From contig CM119377.1 of the NCBI GenBank assembly GCA_051294905.1, positions 7,750,001 through 7,814,000 on the forward strand: a stretch of DNA of 64,000 nt, written 5' to 3'. The position numbers and the translations under genes are program-made. The notes under the pieces are model-generated. The model saw only the letters and a list, made by a program, of their open reading frames with translations. It did not search any database and was not told the DNA's origin. The stretch is from Botryllus schlosseri. Lineage: Eukaryota. Below are positions 2,545-10,695 of this stretch, one piece after another; the first letter of the stretch is position 1, and the number at the start of each line of letters is the position of its first letter.

Positions 2545-3162
2545 ATGTCTATATTGGAGTATAACGGTGGCGCAGTCATGGCTATGAAAGGCAAAGGCTG
2601 CGTAGCTATTGCATCAGATCTCCGCTATGGCGTACAAGCACAAACTGTGCATATGGATTTTGAAAAACTGTTTCCAATGGGAGAAAGACTCTACATTGGA
2701 CTAGCAGGGCTCGCCACCGACGTGCAAACGGTATCAAGCAAACTCAATTTCCGTCGTAAATTGTATGAACTGCGAGAAAACCGAGCAATCAAACCCAAAA
2801 CATTCATGAGCGTTGTATCGAATCTATTGTACGAGAGAAGATTTGGTCCGTTCTTTGTGGAGCCTGTTATCGCTGGATTAGATCCAAAGACAGATGAGCC
2901 ATACATCGGCTCGCTTGATTTGATTGGATGCCCGATGGAACCAGAAGATTTTGTTGTAAGTGGAACCTGTTCTGAACAAATGTACGGGATGTGTGAAGTT
3001 TTATGGAGGCCCGAAATGAACCCAGATGAACTTTTTGAATGTATTTCCCAATCGCTCCTTAACGCTGTCGACAGAGATGCTGTGTCCGGCTGGGGGGCCG
3101 TTGTTCATGTCATTGAAAAAGACAAGATTACAACTAGGAAACTGAAGGGGAGGATGGACTAA
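2545..3162 (+). CDS. PSMB3: Proteasome subunit beta type-3, single coding exon, 205 aa
   Basis: Intact [32 protein letters not shown]...DRDAVSGWG...[11 protein letters not shown], full length for the family. A candidate splice acceptor (ctatcattcag, ending 2523) lies 21 nt upstream of the ATG. Confidence 0.97.
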
Positions 3163-3563: not shown

Positions 3564-6500
3564 TCATGATGGTGGTTGGTCCTCTGCCTCTCCTGGTATT
3601 TTGAAACGAATCGATGATATTCTTTGAGTAGAGTGTCCGTCAGTGACCTGTCCTACAGAATCATTGATATCATTAGCTTGCATCTCAGAGAAATGGTTAG
3701 TATTTCTGCGAAAAGAAAGAATACTCTCGTCCAGGAATTTGGATGGTATTTTAGGTTGTTTTCGTGGAAACCAATTTTGGGAGATGTCCTGCTGTACCCT
3801 GTTCAATCTTATTCTAATCGCTTCACGTAATGATTTGGGTGCTGACACGTCACGGCTGTTGACATCTTGAATTCCAGCCAATACCCATTCCATCAACAGA
3901 AGAACGAATCCGGTCCCCATTGCCAGAGCTACAAAGTAGAATACACCTGCTAGCTCTTCGAACTGCAGTCTCTTGTAATTCGCATCATTGGCTGTAGTTT
4001 GTCTGATGCATTCACCCAGTTCGCTGAAATATCTCTCCCAAAGAACTGTCATGTAGCCGGATTCTTTTAATCGCAGAATGTTCCTAGAGAAGACAGGCTT
4101 CAAAGGAGAATTTTTTGTGAATGCAGCGGCATACGCAACTCCCCCAAATCCTACGTTGACAGTCCGTAGCTGGCAGTTGGATTTTGAAGCTTCCAGGTCC
4201 AAAACTAACGAGTCCCAGAAAAACGCGTAGCTCCCGTTCCCCACTCTTTCCATGCCCTTGTCGGTCGAGGACACCATAAACCTGTCTGGATCAGATTGCA
4301 GATAGTTATATATGCTAGTCGCAACCTTAACTCCAGACGATTTGAAAATGAATTCAACCGAACTGTCGGAAACGGTCCCGTAGTCGATTTTAGTTTGAGA
4401 AACCAGGTCCGAAACGGAATCCCACGCTGTGATGTCCATTTGGTTCGACGCAACAAAGGCTACCATGTTAGCTGTGTAAGACGCGACAAAGACAACTGCA
4501 GAGAGATACCAAACCGCAGTCAGAATGCGTGCGGAAGGCGCACGGGGAACCGTTTCTGGTGTCTGCCAAAACAAGGACGCCCACACGAAGAACAACACAT
4601 TGCTCATTCCCATCCTGGTATCAGCGTTTTCTTTCTCTTCCCGTAGTTTCTTAACCTCATCTTTGCGGTTGGATTTCACGTTCCATTCTGACGCGCTGAG
4701 GTTGCTATAACTAGATGTCTTCCTTCGAAATTTGTCAGCTCTAGGGCCAAGGTAGAAATGTCCTCTCGCTCCGTACGGGCTGAGACGAGAGAGCAAGTTC
4801 AAGAATGATGCCAGACACAATACACATATGGCTATAGCAAGATATAACGAATTTTGAAACGGAAGTAGAAATCCAAACGCTGACGGCTCTGCTTTAACAT
4901 GAGAAGTCAAATTAGCGATTGCGGACGCGTTAATGATATATTTCAGGCCTATATCAACAAAAGCTGTGGAAAAGTCAACCACAGCCGCTCGCTCCGCCGT
5001 CACAGTGATAGGGGCTACAGCCGCATGAGATTTCCCTCGTTTGACATCGCCTATTATGCCGTTCCACAGGCCTGAATCACTGTCGTACCCTCCATACTTC
5101 GAATCCTCCACTAGTCTGAGCGTGTACCGCAACCCTGCGTTCTCACTAATCTTTTGCAGCATATCTACGCAATAACCGCTCAGCTCAACATCCATGCCTG
5201 GTTTTCTATCGCCTAACGGGACCGAATCAGTGTAAACTCGATTCGACAAAATCTCGCCTTTATACGATGTGTTCTGACTGCCCAGCATTACGAACGGAGG
5301 CTCGAGAATCGTGACGACATGCACGATCGGAACGTCGGAGCTTTCCTCGCCATTTGCTTGCCTTGGCCTTGGAGTATTCATCCTGGATGCTCTCAAAGAT
5401 TTTGAAAAATTCAAGAACAAAAGCGATGACATGTTCAGTTTTGTCACCGATTTCCAATCTCCCATTTCTGTCCACTTACCGCTCTTTGAAAGCAGTATGT
5501 CGTAATTTGTAGAGTTGATCTTTCCGTCTGGGTCGAACAACAGAGGACTGGTAAGTCCCGACGCGTTCGCACGCAAGATGGCGTTGCGCAGTTGCAAACC
5601 ATCAAATTCTTTGGCTGGTAGTCCTTGATGCTGCAACATAATCGATATACAATTACACATAGTCGCAACAACGACAGGAAATGTACTTGTTTGAAGTGCG
5701 CGATATTGTTATTTGTTACAGACACACCTTGCTTCGATAACCTTCGACACCGTGCGCAACGCTCAACATTCCATCAATGTATTTTTCTAATCCTAATCCT
5801 AGCTCATTTTGAAAATCCGAATTCGGTCCAATGTTTCTGTCATCCCAAAATGACTTCAAATCGCGTAGCAGATTACCCCCCGAAGCCGCAGGTCTTGTCC
5901 CGATCAGACCTTTGAAAATACAGATTAAATTCCAACTATTTGAAAATCCAACAGTCGTAAACATGGAAACTAATATTCGTACCATCGAAATTAGTTTTCT
6001 GTAAATCGCCATTTGATGTCGTGTATTCAACCTTCAACACATCCGGTGCTATCAGTCCGTCCAGCAATATCCAAACCCAATTTTTAGACACGACCAATCC
6101 TCTTTGAAACGCTTCTTGCAAGAGATAAGCTCCAGAGTCTTCATTGGTCGCGACGGCGATGGGGTGGGCTTTGAGATCCCGTAACTGATTGAGTACTTGC
6201 GTGATTTCTTCGACGAAATACGATCGCTCGGTCTGCGTTACAAAAGCCGGAGAGACAAAAACATACGGCAACGGTTTGCACAGTATAGTGTACCGATACT
6301 GCTAGCTCAGGAAATACACCTATGGACTTTATTGAAAGCGATTACTAATGCATATTTCGGCGTAATATAGGCAATCGAAAATTATTGAAATTTTAAGCTC
6401 CTGGGCGGCTAGGCCACTTGGTTGATAACTGTATAACTCTAACACTTTGCATCATGAATTAGGGTGGACTGAATATAGAGAATTTATAGCCTTAATTGTC

Positions 6501-9500
6501 ACAGTCCTACTTTTTGTGCTCCAATGCAAGTGAATTTCATTTCACATTTTGCGGTGGTTACTGTGGGGTATATGCGGTCTGTGTCTTTATTTATCCTTCA
6601 AAGGATATCCTTCAAATGACATCACCAGTGAATTTTCAAAGCTAATACCATGAACGCATCTCATCCACAGACGAAATGCTATGTTTGCGACTAGCCAGTT
6701 ACGTGCAGGTACAAAACATCACCGCGGTTTTCTCGTTGAGATATGGTGACAATGACAAGTTCGCTGTGTACAATAACCTAAGACCTAACATGGTACGGCG
6801 TATTGCATGACGGTATCCCAAACCAAACGTGGGATCATATCACAATTCACAAGTCACTTAGTGATATACGACGCCATGGATTCCGCAGTCACGGTTCGCA
6901 AGAAGTGTATGGACATGGACAATGCTTTTGTGCAGAACAATGATACTGCAAAATCTCACGGCCACCTGATTTCAAGGGGGCGGAAACTTGATTGTTACAC
7001 AGTTGTGAAACGAATCTACAAAGTACACTTCAGTGTGCACTATATATACATTGTGTAGGATTACTCGTAAACTACGTCCCTGTGAGTGATAATACCGCGA
7101 ACTTTTGCCTGGTTTTACCGACCCATTATCAAAGAAAGTTTGCGCTATCCTATTCACCGCGTTTAGAATCCGGAGCTACTATCGTAAGCGTTTCGGGTAA
7201 CGTTGCTATGTAAATTCGGATCGCTCAGATACTCACGGTCACAGTGTGACATGTTGATTAGATTAGGTTCGGTTGGGAGAGCGACAAAATAACTCGATTA
7301 GAAAAATCAAACAGCACCTTGCAACCTAATATTCTTGTGATTGACAACTGAATGTTTCCGGCTGAGCCGGCTTGACTGACAATCAATATTCGACGTTACA
7401 GACGGGCAAAAATTTCGGATTTGACTGCATAATTTATCAACAACTGGCAAAGCTGCCGAGTATGATACAATTCTGGTCAAGAGTCACGAATCTTTCAACT
7501 ATTGTTTTTCAAGTCGAGTAACTGGGAAATTAAAAATTAATCTCAGGGAAAATCCGCTCGTAAAATTCGACCGTGCTTTACCATCTTGAAAAGCTACCCC
7601 GTGGCTGTGTCATTTCGCTAATGAAAACACACTTCGGCGAGTTATACAATGTTGAACGCCACATATAGCATGAAGTTGAACCGCGCCAAGGCCAAGGGAT
7701 TAAAGTCAAACACTTGACACGTCAGCTTGGTTTTACGGATACGTTAAATCAGCGAAACGGTAGATTTATTTTATGCCTGCATCGAGAGGTATATAGTTAC
7801 ATGTTATGTTTTGTATATAAACAGAGTATTTTATGCGGGCACCAAAATTCACGATAACACCTAAAACGGGTGCATGGTTCGTCAGCTAACATATATACAT
7901 TGGCTTGCGATTATATATTAACCATCGCACGAAAACCATTTCAAAATTGCGCGCTCAATGCGCAAATATGCCATTATATCACAATGCACTATTACAATAC
8001 TTTGATCATCAACGGACGTGTTTGTACGGCTGTCAAATTCATTGCGTAACACCGATTCTCAAACACGAAAACCAATTATTCATAAGTCCTTTGAATTACG
8101 TATTGGCGACGACTAAACGATACACCTCGTCACTGGACGTACGCTGTTATCGAAGCATTTTGCATCAATTAGGATGATAAGCGATAGTCCGTAACGACCG
8201 AGTAATTGTGTTTTCAGGCTATTTCGTGTCTCCGTAAATCGTCAAATTTCGGTTTTACGAAGCAATACCGGGCACGATTCATCTTGAGTTCGATATTCAA
8301 ACGTTCAGCGTGTGGCGGCTGTGTTATTATGTTACGGTACTGAACGAAACGGTTTGACACACAGAACTCTTTATATAAACATTAAACACATACCATCAAC
8401 TCAACATACTGTACTCTAAAAACATAAGTGCCACTGTACTGGTGCATTGCGTCTGCTCGGAATGTACTATAATGGGTTTTATACTTTTTACACCCCGAGT
8501 TCGTAACTGCATGTCCCGGCGCGTAAATTTCGCGTGAAGCGCTATATATTTTGCTGGCATTACGATGTCAACACAAATATCGTATGTACGTTGACATCCG
8601 ATAAAATTTATTGCAAACTCCCGATGAGTGAAGTATATGCCTAAGTTCACAGAAACCCGCGGTGCGTCCGGTGGTCCGAACATTTGAAATGAGGATATCC
8701 ACATATGGCTTTCGTGTGGCTTGTTTTGTGTGGAAACGACTATCATTGAATAGTATATTCATATTGAAATGAACCCGAGTATTTTCGGCTGACACTCGTC
8801 AGGGGTAACCGTCAACAGCTAGTAGAGAAATGGAAGTACATTGCATATCTACAATCGTATCACGACTATCAAGACGAAAATGCTCGGCGTCAAAGAGAGG
8901 CGGCATTTCTTTAACCAACATGATTATTGTGATTTGTGAGAGAAATTTCATTTTGGTTGTTTCTGCAGTTCGAGGTTCAGGCCCAAGATCGAAACAATTG
9001 AAATTTTGCATAATTTCGGACAATGAAATGATGACTCCAGTTTTATACGCACGATCAATTGATCATTGATCACGCATGATAATTGTAGACTAATTGAATA
9101 GGGTGTTTCTTAACGTTCAAATGCATTTCGGTTTGCATCGTAAACGTGTATGTATATCCTAATCCAAAATATCAACAATCTTATAAGAGGCCGATATCTA
9201 CCATCTTGGACAACCAGTCAACCGAATTTATAATTTTAGTCCGATTCTAATTTCCTCGACGCATTCCAAATAGCGAGTGTCAAAACAATGAATATCTTCA
9301 ACATATCGAGTGTCACAATAACGTGTCATTCAAAATAACCCAGCCTAACCTTACACAATACACATATCCCTTAACCCAACACCTGTAAACCTATGCCAGG
9401 TTAACTCTAACACTAATTTAGTATTTGGAACAACTCCCTCGCTATTTAGAATAGTATCAATAAACACCGATTTCAAACACATTTTGCCTTACCTTCAATC

Positions 9501-10695
9501 GCGTAACGACCTCCAATTTGATTCTACGGTTCATTGCCAGGGTCATCAAAGCATCCTCGACACCAAATCCGTAATCGTTGTCCGTCGTTATGATCGACAG
9601 ACACTCCCAGCCGTAAAACTGCAGGATATCCAGAACCGCCTGTAACGATGGGGTTTATGAAACTCGCAATCAGATTTTAGGACTTGAAGGAAAATTGATA
9701 ATGGAATGTGGTTTGGTGGGATCGGCTCTTTGGGGTTATCGGAAGCCCTTCCATTTCAAACTTGAAACTTCGATTCTATCTCCAATATTTCTCAGCTCAT
9801 GTTAAAATCAGTGATTCGTATTATCAGTTATTTAGTTAGTTGTGTTTTAGTTAGTTCGTTGCGGATTTTCAAAGGTTGATAGCTGTAGTTCTAGCTCTAG
9901 TTGCGAGTTCTGAAAGGTGAGTAGTTCTAGTTCTAGTTCAAAATCCAGTAGTTTGTGCAAGCTTGTCAATCTCCGTCTCCCTAACTTAGATGGTATTTAA
10001 TATTAACAATAAGAATGTTTTTTTTTAAAGCTTACCTGTGTCTGATATGTGTCAGGCGGTGACAGACGTACCATCAAAGGAAATCGCTTGGTCTGGCGCA
10101 ATGCTGGGTCCGTTGCAAACGGAAGAACATGGGGCACGTCCTTCTTGACCGCATACGGATGCATCTGCAAATCTTGTATTTTGAGAAGTGCTTGTCGTTA
10201 GACTAGTTGGTGCATACGTCGGCGCGACTATAATTCGACTCACAAGTTTAGAAGAGGTGCTGGAGCCTGGTCCCACGATTGCTTGTATATTTAGGTTATC
10301 CATATTTGTTGCAATCCTGTACAATCCAGACCCCGTTACATCTTGCAATAGATAATTATCGTTTTCGGAAGGTAACAGCCTAAACAGCAAAAAAGTCGCG
10401 TTCGATATCGTGAATTCGCGGAGACTGATGTATGACACATAATTATAATTAGTCATGAACTCGTATAAACCATAGTCAATAGGCATGTCCGTTACCTGAC
10501 TTCCATCTTCCATCCCTCAGAAAGTATGATGTTATTGACGAAGCTCAAGACCAGATCCAAGGCCTGTATAGTTTTGTTCCCATTCACCGGCGCACCCACC
10601 AAGGCCACGCCTATTGTTTTTGACTCATTCGAATCGATTTCTGCTTTTATGATTGCAGACAAAAGCACAAATCCTGTCAAGATTCTCCACAGCAT
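3564..10695 (-). CDS. Divergent ionotropic glutamate receptor subunit (signal peptide, LIVBP-like ATD, S1/S2, M1-M4), ~1051 aa, 7 exons
   Basis: GT-AG exon model, all in phase: 10496-10695, 10244-10424, 10036-10164, 9493-9639, 5983-6232, 5728-5909, 3564-5630 (3156 nt). ATD motifs AIVGPGSS, RLSPPDTYQ, ILQFYGW, DNDYG; S1 APITVTAER; M3 SYTANMVAF; S2 YGTV..SSV and AFFWDS. Confidence 0.9.
8746..8860 (+). repeat. Dispersed repeat family E (unclassified)
   Basis: AATAGTATATTCATATTGAAATGAAC..TCGGCTGACACTCGTCAGGGGTAA..CTAGTAGAGAA. Related copies or fragments at ~38521-38600 (+), ~40070-40125 (+), ~40270-40330 (-), ~41680-41735 (-), ~51780-51890 (-), ~53915-53942 (-). Confidence 0.75.

What the first reader, a model, noticed from the sequence alone, without database searches (positions are those of the whole stretch)
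3564..5630. Glutamate-receptor homolog with a glycine/D-serine-type binding pocket and a Trp-Gln-Thr pore tip
Seen: S2 reads YGTVSDSSV (4356-4364) and AFFWDSLVL (4209-4217); S1 keeps the PxTxTxxR motif; M2 reads WASLFWQTPETVPRAPSAR (WQT at 4560-4568); M3 reads SYTANMVAF. Known: glutamate-binding subunits have Thr and Glu where this protein has Val and Trp-Asp, the pattern of glycine-binding GluN1 (V689/W731/D732) and similar to GluD2. It lacks the NMDA loop-1 cysteines, so it is not a plain GluN1. Aligned to AMPA (FMQQG), the Q/R/N site is Trp and the conserved Gly is Thr, reminiscent of GluN3 LFGRT, and SYTANLAAF has L6M and A7V changes. Inference: a glycine/D-serine-sensing receptor of an invertebrate iGluR clade (epsilon/phi/delta-like) with unusual permeation, or a modulatory or non-conducting subunit.
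Basis: partly seen in the sequence, partly recalled or inferred. Interest (0 to 1): 0.7.

Follow-up and report, generated by a model that had tools for sequence, protein, structure and literature searches.

The report
Sea-squirt Epsilon receptor with tryptophan pore
This is an intact sea-squirt gene for a glutamate-receptor-family ion channel of the known "Epsilon" group; it probably senses glycine-like small amino acids rather than glutamate, and like all its sea-squirt relatives it has a tryptophan at the key pore position, a change that made a rat channel bind its internal polyamine blocker thousands of times more tightly.

Summary
Window 3564-5630 (minus strand) is the last, 2,067-nt exon of an intact 7-exon, about 1,036-aa iGluR gene (ATG at 10695) in a tunicate genome. 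SSV (4356-4364), WDS (4209-4217), WQT (4560-4568), SYTANMVAF and PxTxTxxR are all present. Ungapped alignment to GluA2 puts W on Q586 (the Q/R/N site), Q on Q587, T on G588 and E on D590.

The gene belongs to a tunicate-only clade that appears to include the two Ciona genes published as GluE1/GluE2 (Epsilon subfamily, Ramos-Vicente 2018; matched here by species and length only). In my trees this clade lies outside AKDF and NMDA. Its nearest relatives are amphioxus, hemichordate and placozoan Epsilon-type receptors.

All 13 clade members examined share W586-Q587-(T/S)-P-(E/D) and nearly all share SYTANMV, and the pore is their best-conserved segment. This rules out a sequencing error or gene decay. 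None of about 130 other representative iGluRs has W at this site.

The pocket (SSV plus WD) is the published glycine-type signature, but ligand prediction from motifs is unreliable; D-serine, alanine or GABA remain possible. The GluK2 Q590W mutant is functional, with a 190 pM spermine Kd. I therefore predict a small-amino-acid-gated cation channel with extreme polyamine block.

Verdict: a known family with an untested natural pore variant, of moderate interest.

The parts
3564..10695 (-). Whole iGluR gene: 7 coding exons, about 1,036 aa (1,045 with the alternative exon-5 acceptor)
   Evidence: tblastn of the Styela clava homolog P0002 covers residues 32-978 in collinear pieces. Splice-junction search gives GT..AG at every intron, and the assembled CDS has a single terminal stop.
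10496..10695 (-). Exon 1: ATG at 10695, hydrophobic signal-peptide-like start (MLWRILTGFVLLSAIIKA), beginning of the amino-terminal domain
10244..10379 (-). Exon 2 (amino-terminal domain)
10036..10164 (-). Exon 3 (amino-terminal domain)
9468..9639 (-). Exon 4 (amino-terminal domain). It is followed by a 3.2-kb intron with no sizeable ORF or repeat. The donor is at 9467, or 9465 in the alternative model.
5983..6207 (-). Exon 5 (amino-terminal domain). The acceptor is uncertain: 6207 fits Styela best, while 6232 has the better polypyrimidine/CAG acceptor.
5728..5909 (-). Exon 6 (end of the amino-terminal domain)
3564..5630 (-).
4878..5327 (-). S1 half of the ligand-binding domain. It holds Y450-equivalent (KYGGY, 5085-5099) and P478/T480/R485 equivalents (APITVTAER, 4989-5015), has no NMDA-type loop-1 cysteines, and carries a loop-1 insert of about 25 aa shared with its closest orthologs.
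4614..4769 (-). Long M1-M2 cytoplasmic loop: 52 aa against about 20 in GluA2, starting with the clade motif SPYGxRGHF
   Evidence: HMMER leaves query 297-340 against GluA2 543-553 unaligned. See also alignment A1. An insertion in this loop is the published hallmark of Epsilon proteins.
4527..4583 (-). M2 end and pore loop WASLFWQTPETVPRAPSAR. Positions: W586 (TGG), Q587 (CAG), T588 (ACA) at 4560-4568, then P589 and E590 (the +4 acid).
   Evidence: In the AF2 model the M2 helix ends two residues before W.
4455..4481 (-). M3 gate motif SYTANMVAF (L620M, A621V; the Lurcher Ala is kept)
3969..4445 (-). S2 half of the ligand-binding domain. It holds the alphaF motif S653-S654-V655 (4356-4364), the beta10/alphaI motif W704-D705 (within 4209-4217), the Y732 equivalent, and the conserved S2 disulfide cysteines.
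3867..3968 (-). M4 region
3567..3866 (-). Cytoplasmic C-terminal tail, the least conserved part (76% identity to P0001 against 95% for the pore)

Best explanation
The stretch is the last exon of an intact gene for an Epsilon-subfamily ionotropic glutamate receptor subunit of an ascidian. It is the GluE1-type counterpart of the published Ciona GluE1/GluE2 genes.

Shown: the gene has a full iGluR architecture (signal peptide, amino-terminal domain, S1/S2 clamshell, M1-M4). It has the long M1-M2 loop typical of Epsilon receptors. It sits phylogenetically in a tunicate-only clade outside AKDF and NMDA.

Inferred, ligand: the binding pocket keeps the residues that hold an alpha-amino acid backbone (R485, D705). 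It also has the S653/S654/V655 plus W704 combination that closes off the glutamate side-chain site. The agonist is therefore most likely glycine or another small neutral amino acid (D-serine, alanine), as for GluN1, GluD2 and amphioxus GluE1.

Inferred, pore: every tunicate member has Trp at the Q/R/N position with the +4 acidic residue kept. By analogy with the rat GluK2 Q590W mutant, four indole rings would point into the central cavity and form an aromatic cage. The channel would still conduct cations, but cytoplasmic polyamines would block it with very high affinity, so it would rectify inward extremely strongly.

The Thr replacing G588 and the M/V changes in SYTANLAAF probably further alter the filter and gate, but their effect cannot be predicted here.
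For: Domains and alignment: Pfam finds Lig_chan-Glu_bd and Lig_chan. The GluA2 alignment is ungapped from M2 to M3. The fold matches AMPA and kainate LBD-TMD structures.

Intact gene: 7 exons, all GT..AG, one stop.

Family: the homologs are tunicate proteins from Styela, Ciona and Clavelina. Ciona P0005 (928 aa) and P0007 (1,039 aa) match GluE1_Cin (927 aa) and GluE2_Cin (1,032 aa, with a very long TMD) of Ramos-Vicente 2018.

Phylogeny: an exhaustive profile search was followed by trees. The tunicate clade has support 100/97, AKDF 100/99, NMDA 100/97, and NMDA+AKDF 99/95 excluding the tunicates. The nearest non-tunicate hits are Branchiostoma, Ptychodera and Trichoplax TRIADDRAFT_55165, which at 915 aa matches GluE1_Tad.

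Conservation: the motif table shows W586-Q587-(T/S)-P-(E/D) in 13 of 13 tunicate members and in none of the other sequences. SYTANMV is in 11 of 13, S(S/A)V in 11 of 13, and W(D/E) in 13 of 13. A word search of the M2-M3 region against 5.8 billion proteins returns tunicates only. The pore is the best-conserved segment: 80% identity to Styela against 52% overall. Synteny with the proteasome gene is kept in two other species.

Literature: S653 plus W704 predicted glycine gating, which was confirmed for amphioxus GluE1. SSV/SAV and WD are 'typical glycine-selective motifs'. GluR6 Q590W is functional, with a spermine Kd(0) of 190 pM (6,600-fold tighter than wild type) and an aromatic-cage model; the +4 Glu is required for high-affinity block.
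Against: No functional, expression or structural data exist for any tunicate Epsilon receptor in the literature I could search.

Ligand prediction from these motifs is explicitly unreliable. Closely related amphioxus Epsilon paralogs are gated by alanine/glycine, GABA or glutamate, and delta receptors with SAV/WD respond to GABA. Position 732 is Tyr, not the Phe of the five-residue glycine rule.

The Q590W result comes from a kainate receptor with Gly at 588 and Ser at 589. Here those positions are Thr and Pro, so the cage geometry may differ.

The trees have no Lambda, plant or bacterial outgroup. An AU test does not reject the tunicate clade as sister to all AKDF (p = 0.10).

The monomer AF2 model is only moderate (pLDDT 67) and cannot show side-chain orientation in a tetramer.
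Confidence: 0.6

Rival explanations
1. Non-conducting or purely modulatory receptor. Four bulky Trp residues at the narrowest point, Thr instead of the filter Gly and Val in the gate keep the pore shut or permanently plugged. The protein would then work like vertebrate GluD, as a ligand-dependent signalling or adhesion scaffold, or only as an accessory subunit.
For: W586, T588 and V621 are all bulkier than the canonical residues. With a picomolar polyamine Kd the GluK2 Q590W mutant needed ramps to very negative voltages to show current. Vertebrate delta receptors with a similar pocket carry no ligand-gated current. Amphioxus GluE7 gave no currents.
Against: Q590W channels do conduct. All known tunicate paralogs carry W, so no Q-type partner exists within the clade. 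The pore loop, the +4 acid and the SYTAN gate are the most strongly conserved parts, which suggests selection on permeation. Plant GLRs with Phe or Tyr at this site conduct.
Confidence: 0.2
2. The agonist is not glycine or D-serine but GABA, alanine or another small molecule; the SSV/WD signature only excludes glutamate.
For: Invertebrate delta receptors (SAV/WD-type) and amphioxus GluE8 are best activated by GABA. [quoted passage not shown] GluA2 carrying GST-to-SSV prefers alanine. Tyr at 732 departs from the strict glycine rule.
Against: GluN1 has the identical SSV/WD combination and binds glycine and D-serine. Amphioxus GluE1, with S653 and W704, is highly glycine-selective.
Confidence: 0.25
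3. It is a divergent AKDF receptor (delta- or phi-like), not Epsilon.
For: The best PDB sequence hits are AMPA and kainate receptors, and the S2 half ties between GluD2 and GluK2. The AU test does not reject tunicate+AKDF as one clade (p = 0.10). NCBI names these proteins 'kainate 2-like' or 'glutamate receptor 3-like'.
Against: AKDF excluding the tunicate clade has 100/99 support, and NMDA+AKDF excluding it has 99/95. The highest-scoring non-tunicate hits are amphioxus, hemichordate and placozoan Epsilon-type proteins. The M1-M2 insertion is the Epsilon hallmark. Ramos-Vicente 2018, with wider sampling, named the Ciona members GluE and found phi absent from urochordates.
Confidence: 0.07
4. 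The functional Q/R/N residue is really the neighbouring Gln (CAG, position 587). The Trp would be the last pore-helix residue packed into the protein, leaving a near-normal Q-type pore that might be regulated by A-to-I editing.
For: Q587 is invariant in the clade. In NMDA GluN2 the N+1 residue contributes to the constriction (established knowledge, not tested here). The AF2 helix ends close to the Trp.
Against: All alignments are ungapped between M2 and the PR/SYTAN anchors and put W at 586 with the acid at exactly +4. There is no unusual RNA secondary structure around the CAG (z = +0.47). The exon has no downstream intron to supply an editing complementary sequence.
Confidence: 0.1
5. Pseudogene decay or sequencing error produced the odd codons.
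For: None found.
Against: The CDS is intact at 3.1 kb with canonical splice sites. The same residues occur in 13 proteins from at least four named or unnamed tunicate sources. The pore is the most conserved region.
Confidence: 0.01

Closest known systems
Ciona intestinalis GluE1_Cin / GluE2_Cin (Epsilon subfamily, Ramos-Vicente et al. 2018, eLife, PMC6307864)
   Same: They fall in the same tunicate clade in my trees. They share the W-Q-(T/S)-P-(E/D) pore tip, SYTANMV, S(S/A)V plus W(D/E) and the long M1-M2 loop. The window gene groups with the GluE1-type branch.
   Different: Identity is only 39% (GluE1-type, P0005) and 31% (GluE2-type, P0007). The window gene and its closest orthologs carry an extra loop-1 insert in S1. 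The match of P0005 and P0007 to the published names rests on species and length, not on accession numbers.
Branchiostoma lanceolatum GluE1 (a functionally characterised Epsilon receptor)
   Same: Epsilon subfamily. S653 and W704 predicted glycine gating, which was confirmed. It forms a homomeric channel with strong inward rectification and has an acidic +4 residue.
   Different: Its Q/R/N residue is reported as Gln or Phe, not Trp. It has the canonical SYTANLAAF. The amphioxus representatives in my set have Q-(Q/L/I)-G-P-E.
Vertebrate GluN1 (glycine-binding NMDA subunit)
   Same: It has identical selectivity residues: P-T-R in S1, S-S-V and W-D in S2.
   Different: It belongs to a different subfamily (NMDA clade support 100/97). 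The window gene has no loop-1 cysteines. Y replaces F at positions 450 and 732, W replaces the N-site Asn, the pore loop is one residue shorter, and the M1-M2 loop is long.
GluD2 / delta receptors
   Same: The pocket is S-A-V plus W-D. The GluD2 LBD is the joint best PDB hit for the S2 half.
   Different: Delta receptors are nested in AKDF and the window gene is not. Delta receptors have Q-Q-G at the pore tip.
Rat GluK2 (GluR6) Q590W engineered mutant (Panchenko et al. 1999; 2001 J Gen Physiol, PMC2217257)
   Same: It has Trp at the Q/R site with Glu at +4. That combination gave a functional channel with a 190 pM spermine Kd.
   Different: It is an artificial point mutant in a kainate receptor with Gly and Ser at +2 and +3. 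Here the Trp is natural, ancient and accompanied by Thr and Pro at +2 and +3 and by M/V changes in M3.
Plant GLRs
   Same: They have an aromatic residue (Phe or Tyr) at the Q/R/N position and an acidic +4 residue, and they conduct cations (statement in PMC12226733).
   Different: They are distant in sequence and lineage and have no Trp. This comparison was not examined here.

Membership tests
Ionotropic glutamate receptor superfamily | Bipartite S1/S2 ligand-binding clamshell interrupted by a channel with M1, a re-entrant M2 pore loop and M3, followed by M4 | tested here: met
   Pfam PF10613 and PF00060. HMMER alignment to GluA2 over S1-M1 and M2-M4. Foldseek E about 1e-27 to AMPA LBD-TMD structures.
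Ionotropic glutamate receptor superfamily | Amino-terminal domain (ANF_receptor type) and signal peptide | tested here: met
   Exons 1-6 align to residues 32-348 of Styela P0002, which carries PF01094. A hydrophobic N-terminus follows the ATG. Pfam was not run on the spliced ATD itself.
Ionotropic glutamate receptor superfamily | SYTANLAAF gating motif in M3 | tested here: met
   The motif is SYTANMVAF. The core residues Y, T, A, N and the Lurcher Ala are kept, and positions 6 and 7 are changed.
Epsilon subfamily (Ramos-Vicente 2018) | Phylogenetic placement outside AKDF, NMDA and Lambda, together with Epsilon proteins | tested here: inconclusive
   The clade is outside AKDF (100/99) and NMDA (100/97), and NMDA+AKDF join at 99/95 without it. 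The nearest relatives are amphioxus, hemichordate and placozoan Epsilon-type proteins. However, no Lambda sequence or outgroup was included, the Epsilon candidates form a grade in the unrooted tree, and the AU test does not reject a position as sister to AKDF (p = 0.10). The published tree names the Ciona members GluE.
Epsilon subfamily (Ramos-Vicente 2018) | Insertion in the M1-M2 intracellular loop | tested here: met
   The loop is 52 aa against about 20 in GluA2. About 43 query residues face 10 GluA2 residues between the HMMER domains. The feature is described.
Epsilon subfamily (Ramos-Vicente 2018) | No loop-1 disulfide cysteines (true of non-ctenophore Epsilon proteins) | tested here: met
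   Alignment A1 against GluN1.
Glycine/D-serine-type iGluR binding pocket | R485 and an acidic residue at 705 to hold the amino-acid backbone | tested here: met
   R in APITVTAER and D in FWDS.
Glycine/D-serine-type iGluR binding pocket | [quoted passage not shown] | tested here: met
   S-S-V at 4356-4364. The rule is given.
Glycine/D-serine-type iGluR binding pocket | Trp at 704 (beta10/alphaI WD) | tested here: met
   W-D.
Glycine/D-serine-type iGluR binding pocket | Phe at 732 | tested here: not met
   The equivalent position has Tyr. Wang 2026 reports glycine-selective receptors with Y or F here, so this residue is weakly diagnostic.
Glycine/D-serine-type iGluR binding pocket | Actual activation by glycine or D-serine and not by glutamate | not testable with these tools
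   Needs electrophysiology or binding assays.
NMDA GluN1 | Membership of the NMDA clade, loop-1 cysteines and Asn at the N site | tested here: not met
   The NMDA clade excludes it (100/97). It has no loop-1 cysteines. W sits at the N site.
Delta / Phi (AKDF classes) | Nested within the AKDF clade | tested here: not met
   AKDF is monophyletic without the tunicate clade at 100/99.
Aromatic-cage (Q590W-like) pore | Trp at the Q/R/N position with an acidic residue at +4 | tested here: met
   W586 and E590 by ungapped alignment.
Aromatic-cage (Q590W-like) pore | Picomolar polyamine block or extreme inward rectification | not testable with these tools
   Known only for the GluK2 mutant.

The most novel reading that the evidence does not exclude
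Tunicate Epsilon receptors are natural aromatic-cage channels: excitatory, glycine-type-gated cation channels in which four Trp residues at the Q/R/N site give near-irreversible cytoplasmic polyamine block. They would then conduct only at strongly negative voltages or when polyamine levels fall. This permeation regime has so far been seen only in an engineered kainate-receptor mutant, and here it would be fixed across the tunicates sampled, the closest invertebrate relatives of vertebrates.
Probability: 0.3. Interest if true: 0.7.

Novelty: new variant of a known kind. Interest (0 to 1): 0.5.

Why it matters
The Q/R/N site is the most studied single position in glutamate-receptor pores. It sets calcium permeability, conductance and polyamine block, and in mammals it is controlled by RNA editing.

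A Trp at this site, fixed in every tunicate Epsilon receptor found, is a natural version of the Q590W mutant that gave picomolar spermine affinity. It offers a ready test of whether the aromatic cage exists in a native channel and what physiology it serves.

It would also add an excitatory receptor for glycine-type transmitters to the small, well-mapped nervous system of ascidian larvae, where glycine is usually treated as inhibitory (my own background knowledge). If the channel instead proves silent, it would parallel the loss of current in vertebrate delta receptors.

The family assignment and the glycine-type pocket are not new in themselves.

Tried and rejected
- **Ka/Ks against the 88%-identical ortholog P0001:** its contig DNA could not be fetched. 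The next ortholog with DNA (L001, 49% aa identity) is too diverged for dS. I used domain-wise identity instead.
- **Reading GluE_Cin pore residues from the Ramos-Vicente alignment:** the stored supplement is truncated and lacks those rows.
- **Reading Panchenko 1999:** not held. The 2001 follow-up was used.
- **Naming the unnamed clade members:** P0131, P0004, P0006, P0008, P0018 and P0021-23 carry no source names. The taxonomic breadth beyond Styela, Ciona and Clavelina, and the identity of the long-branch P0131, stay unknown.
- **AU test of tunicate+AKDF:** not rejected (p = 0.10), so I do not claim a formally proven Epsilon placement.
- **RNA-editing hairpin around the CAG:** nothing unusual. 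One inverted-repeat call failed on a strand argument and was not repeated.
- **PDB search with S2 alone:** it ties between GluD2 and GluK2 and is uninformative on ligand.
- **The 3.2-kb intron 4:** no ORF or repeat of note.
- **Earlier scan notes:** no other iGluR notes on this genome.
Full report
**1. What is there**

The window is eukaryotic DNA of about 41% GC. On the minus strand a 698-codon ORF (3564-5660) carries the Pfam domains Lig_chan-Glu_bd (2.8e-26) and Lig_chan (5e-25). It aligns to GluA2 structures at E = 6e-58.

tblastn with the closest full-length homolog, Styela clava 'glutamate receptor 3-like' (P0002, 1,081 aa), finds six further collinear pieces upstream, up to 10608. A splice-junction search gives a clean 7-exon model:
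- 10695-10496
- 10379-10244
- 10164-10036
- 9639-9468
- 6207-5983 (alternative acceptor at 6232)
- 5909-5728
- 5630-3564

Every intron is GT..AG. The CDS is 3,111 nt with a single terminal stop, and the protein starts with a hydrophobic signal-peptide-like segment.

**2. The observation**

All quoted motifs and coordinates are correct: SSV at 4356-4364, WDS at 4209-4217, WQT (TGG CAG ACA) at 4560-4568, SYTANMVAF at 4455-4481 and APITVTAER at 4989-5015.

The HMMER alignment to GluA2 has no gap from the M2 helix through M3. It places W on Q586 (the Q/R site), Q on Q587, T on G588, P on C589 and E on D590. It places S-V on S654-T655 and W-D on L704-E705.

A primate GluN1 turned up among the hits (P0010). 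Against it the pocket residues are identical (P-T-R, S-S-V, W-D), the Trp falls on the N-site Asn, and the four GluN1 loop-1 cysteines are absent. The comparison to vertebrate GluN3 was not tested.

**3. Which family**

The only close relatives in 5.8 billion proteins are tunicate proteins:
- an unnamed 88%-identical protein (P0001)
- Styela clava (52%)
- two Ciona intestinalis proteins called 'kainate 2-like' (P0005, 928 aa, 39%; P0007, 1,039 aa, 31%)
- Clavelina lepadiformis

Ramos-Vicente et al. 2018 list exactly two Ciona proteins of 'unreported classes': GluE1_Cin (927 aa) and GluE2_Cin (1,032 aa, with an unusually long transmembrane region). Both are Epsilon-subfamily members. Lengths and the very long M1-M2 loop of P0007 match these, although I could not match accession numbers.

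An exhaustive profile search of 1.84 billion representatives shows a sharp score gap after the tunicate group. The next-best hits are from Branchiostoma, Ptychodera flava, Trichoplax (TRIADDRAFT_55165, 915 aa, the length of GluE1_Tad) and a few spiralians.

Trees of 141 sequences (FastTree) and of 58 sequences (IQ-TREE, LG+C20 PMSF) agree. Support values (ultrafast bootstrap / SH-aLRT) are:

| Grouping | Support |
|---|---|
| Tunicate clade | 100/97 |
| AKDF | 100/99 |
| NMDA | 100/97 |
| NMDA+AKDF, excluding the tunicates | 99/95 |

The tunicates sit among the Epsilon-type sequences. There are three caveats. I had no Lambda or non-animal outgroup. The Epsilon candidates form a grade in the unrooted tree. 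An AU test does not reject the tunicate clade as sister to all AKDF (p = 0.10).

The clade also has the published Epsilon hallmark, an insertion in the M1-M2 loop (52 aa here against about 20 in GluA2). Delta- or phi-class membership is excluded, because AKDF is monophyletic without the tunicate clade. Ramos-Vicente also report phi as absent from urochordates.

**4. The odd residues are clade-wide and selected**

Thirteen tunicate members were compared with 45 other iGluRs:

| Feature | Tunicate members | Other iGluRs |
|---|---|---|
| W586 | 13/13 | 0 |
| Q587 | 13/13 | not counted |
| T or S at 588 | 13/13 | not counted |
| P589 | 13/13 | not counted |
| E or D at 590 | 13/13 | not counted |
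| YTANMV | 11/13 | 0 exact (one AKDF sequence has YTANMA) |
| S(S/A)V | 11/13 | present in GluN1 and a delta-like sequence |
| W(D/E) | 13/13 | present in many others |

The simple motif scan of all 161 retrieved proteins gives the same picture. A word search restricted to the M2-M3 segment returns seven proteins, all tunicate or unnamed members of this clade.

The pore segment is the best-conserved part of the protein. Identity is 95% to P0001 and 80% to Styela, against 88% and 52% overall. The C-terminal tail is the least conserved.

The gene's tail-to-tail neighbour, an intronless proteasome beta subunit gene (2545-3162), is in the same position on the contigs of P0001 and P0003. These are therefore orthologous loci. 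Sequencing error or pseudogene decay is excluded.

**5. Ligand**

The backbone-binding residues are kept (R485, D705). The side-chain selectors are S653, S654, V655 and W704.

Ramos-Vicente used S653 and W704 to predict glycine gating of amphioxus GluE1 and confirmed it by patch clamp. Wang et al. 2026 call SSV/SAV and WD 'typical glycine-selective motifs'. GluN1 has the identical set.

Against a firm call, the same 2026 paper shows closely related amphioxus Epsilon paralogs gated by alanine/glycine, GABA or glutamate, and warns that motif-based prediction is unreliable. Invertebrate delta receptors with SAV/WD are GABA-gated. Position 732 here is Tyr, not the Phe of the five-residue rule.

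I conclude that glutamate is unlikely. A small neutral amino acid is likely, with glycine first and D-serine or alanine next. GABA is not excluded.

**6. Pore**

In rat GluK2 (GluR6), replacing the Q/R-site Gln with Trp (Q590W) leaves a functional channel. Its spermine affinity rises 6,600-fold to Kd(0) = 190 pM, an effect unique to that position in a 37-residue Trp scan. It was explained by four indole rings pointing into the central cavity as an aromatic cage. [quoted passage not shown]

The tunicate receptors combine W at that site with a conserved +4 acid. The most likely consequence is a conducting cation channel with extremely strong inward rectification from polyamine block.

Amphioxus GluE1 already rectifies strongly. 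Plant GLRs are reported to tolerate Phe or Tyr at this site.

Several things remain uncertain:
- The Gly-to-Thr change at 588 and the Pro at 589 may reshape the filter.
- Val at the A621 gate position and Met at L620 may change gating (inference from GluA2 gate anatomy, my own knowledge).
- The monomer AF2 model (pLDDT 67; M2 helix ending two residues before the Trp) cannot show side-chain orientation in a tetramer.

A silent, GluD-like receptor remains a real alternative.

**7. Novelty**

The Epsilon family, its glycine-type members, its M1-M2 insertion and the variability of its Q/R/N residue are all published. The Ciona members were in that data set.

I found no paper that mentions a Trp at this site in tunicate receptors or that has expressed any tunicate Epsilon receptor.

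The gene is thus a new member of a known family that carries an unstudied, clade-wide natural variant of the best-known pore position, with a specific and testable biophysical prediction. I rate it of moderate interest (0.5).

Noticed in passing
window 2545-3162 (+): An intronless 205-aa proteasome beta-type subunit gene (PF00227, 1.5e-42) lies tail-to-tail with the iGluR gene, with the stop codons 401 bp apart. The same neighbour arrangement occurs on the contigs carrying P0001 and P0003, so the microsynteny is conserved across ascidian species.
   Followed up: partly
P0131 (unnamed ENA contig, 1,115 aa): A very long-branch member of the tunicate clade with a CWQSPE pore tip, but SYTANLVAF, alphaF 'SVA' and WE. 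It could come from a fast-evolving tunicate lineage, which would date the Trp to early tunicates. Its source organism is unknown.
   Followed up: partly
P0007 (Ciona) and P0009 (Clavelina), GluE2-type: Their M1-M2 cytoplasmic loops are about 100 aa long and rich in Ser, Arg and Glu, far longer than in the GluE1-type members. P0007 has W-E rather than W-D at positions 704-705.
   Followed up: no
window 5983-6232 (-): Exon 5 has two possible acceptors. 6207 fits the Styela protein best. 6232 adds 9 residues overall (with its paired exon-4 donor at 9465) and has the better polypyrimidine/CAG signal. This could be alternative splicing or simply an unresolved model.
   Followed up: partly
window 5150-5250 (-), S1 loop 1: The window gene and its closest orthologs (P0001-P0004) share an insert of about 25 aa in LBD loop 1 (consensus NRxxx..D.xP....PGM.V) that the Ciona GluE1/GluE2-type members lack. 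In NMDA receptors this loop contributes to subunit contacts.
   Followed up: no
window 6208-9467: Intron 4 is 3.2 kb, far longer than the other introns (61-396 nt). It contains no ORF over 116 aa and no notable repeats.
   Followed up: partly
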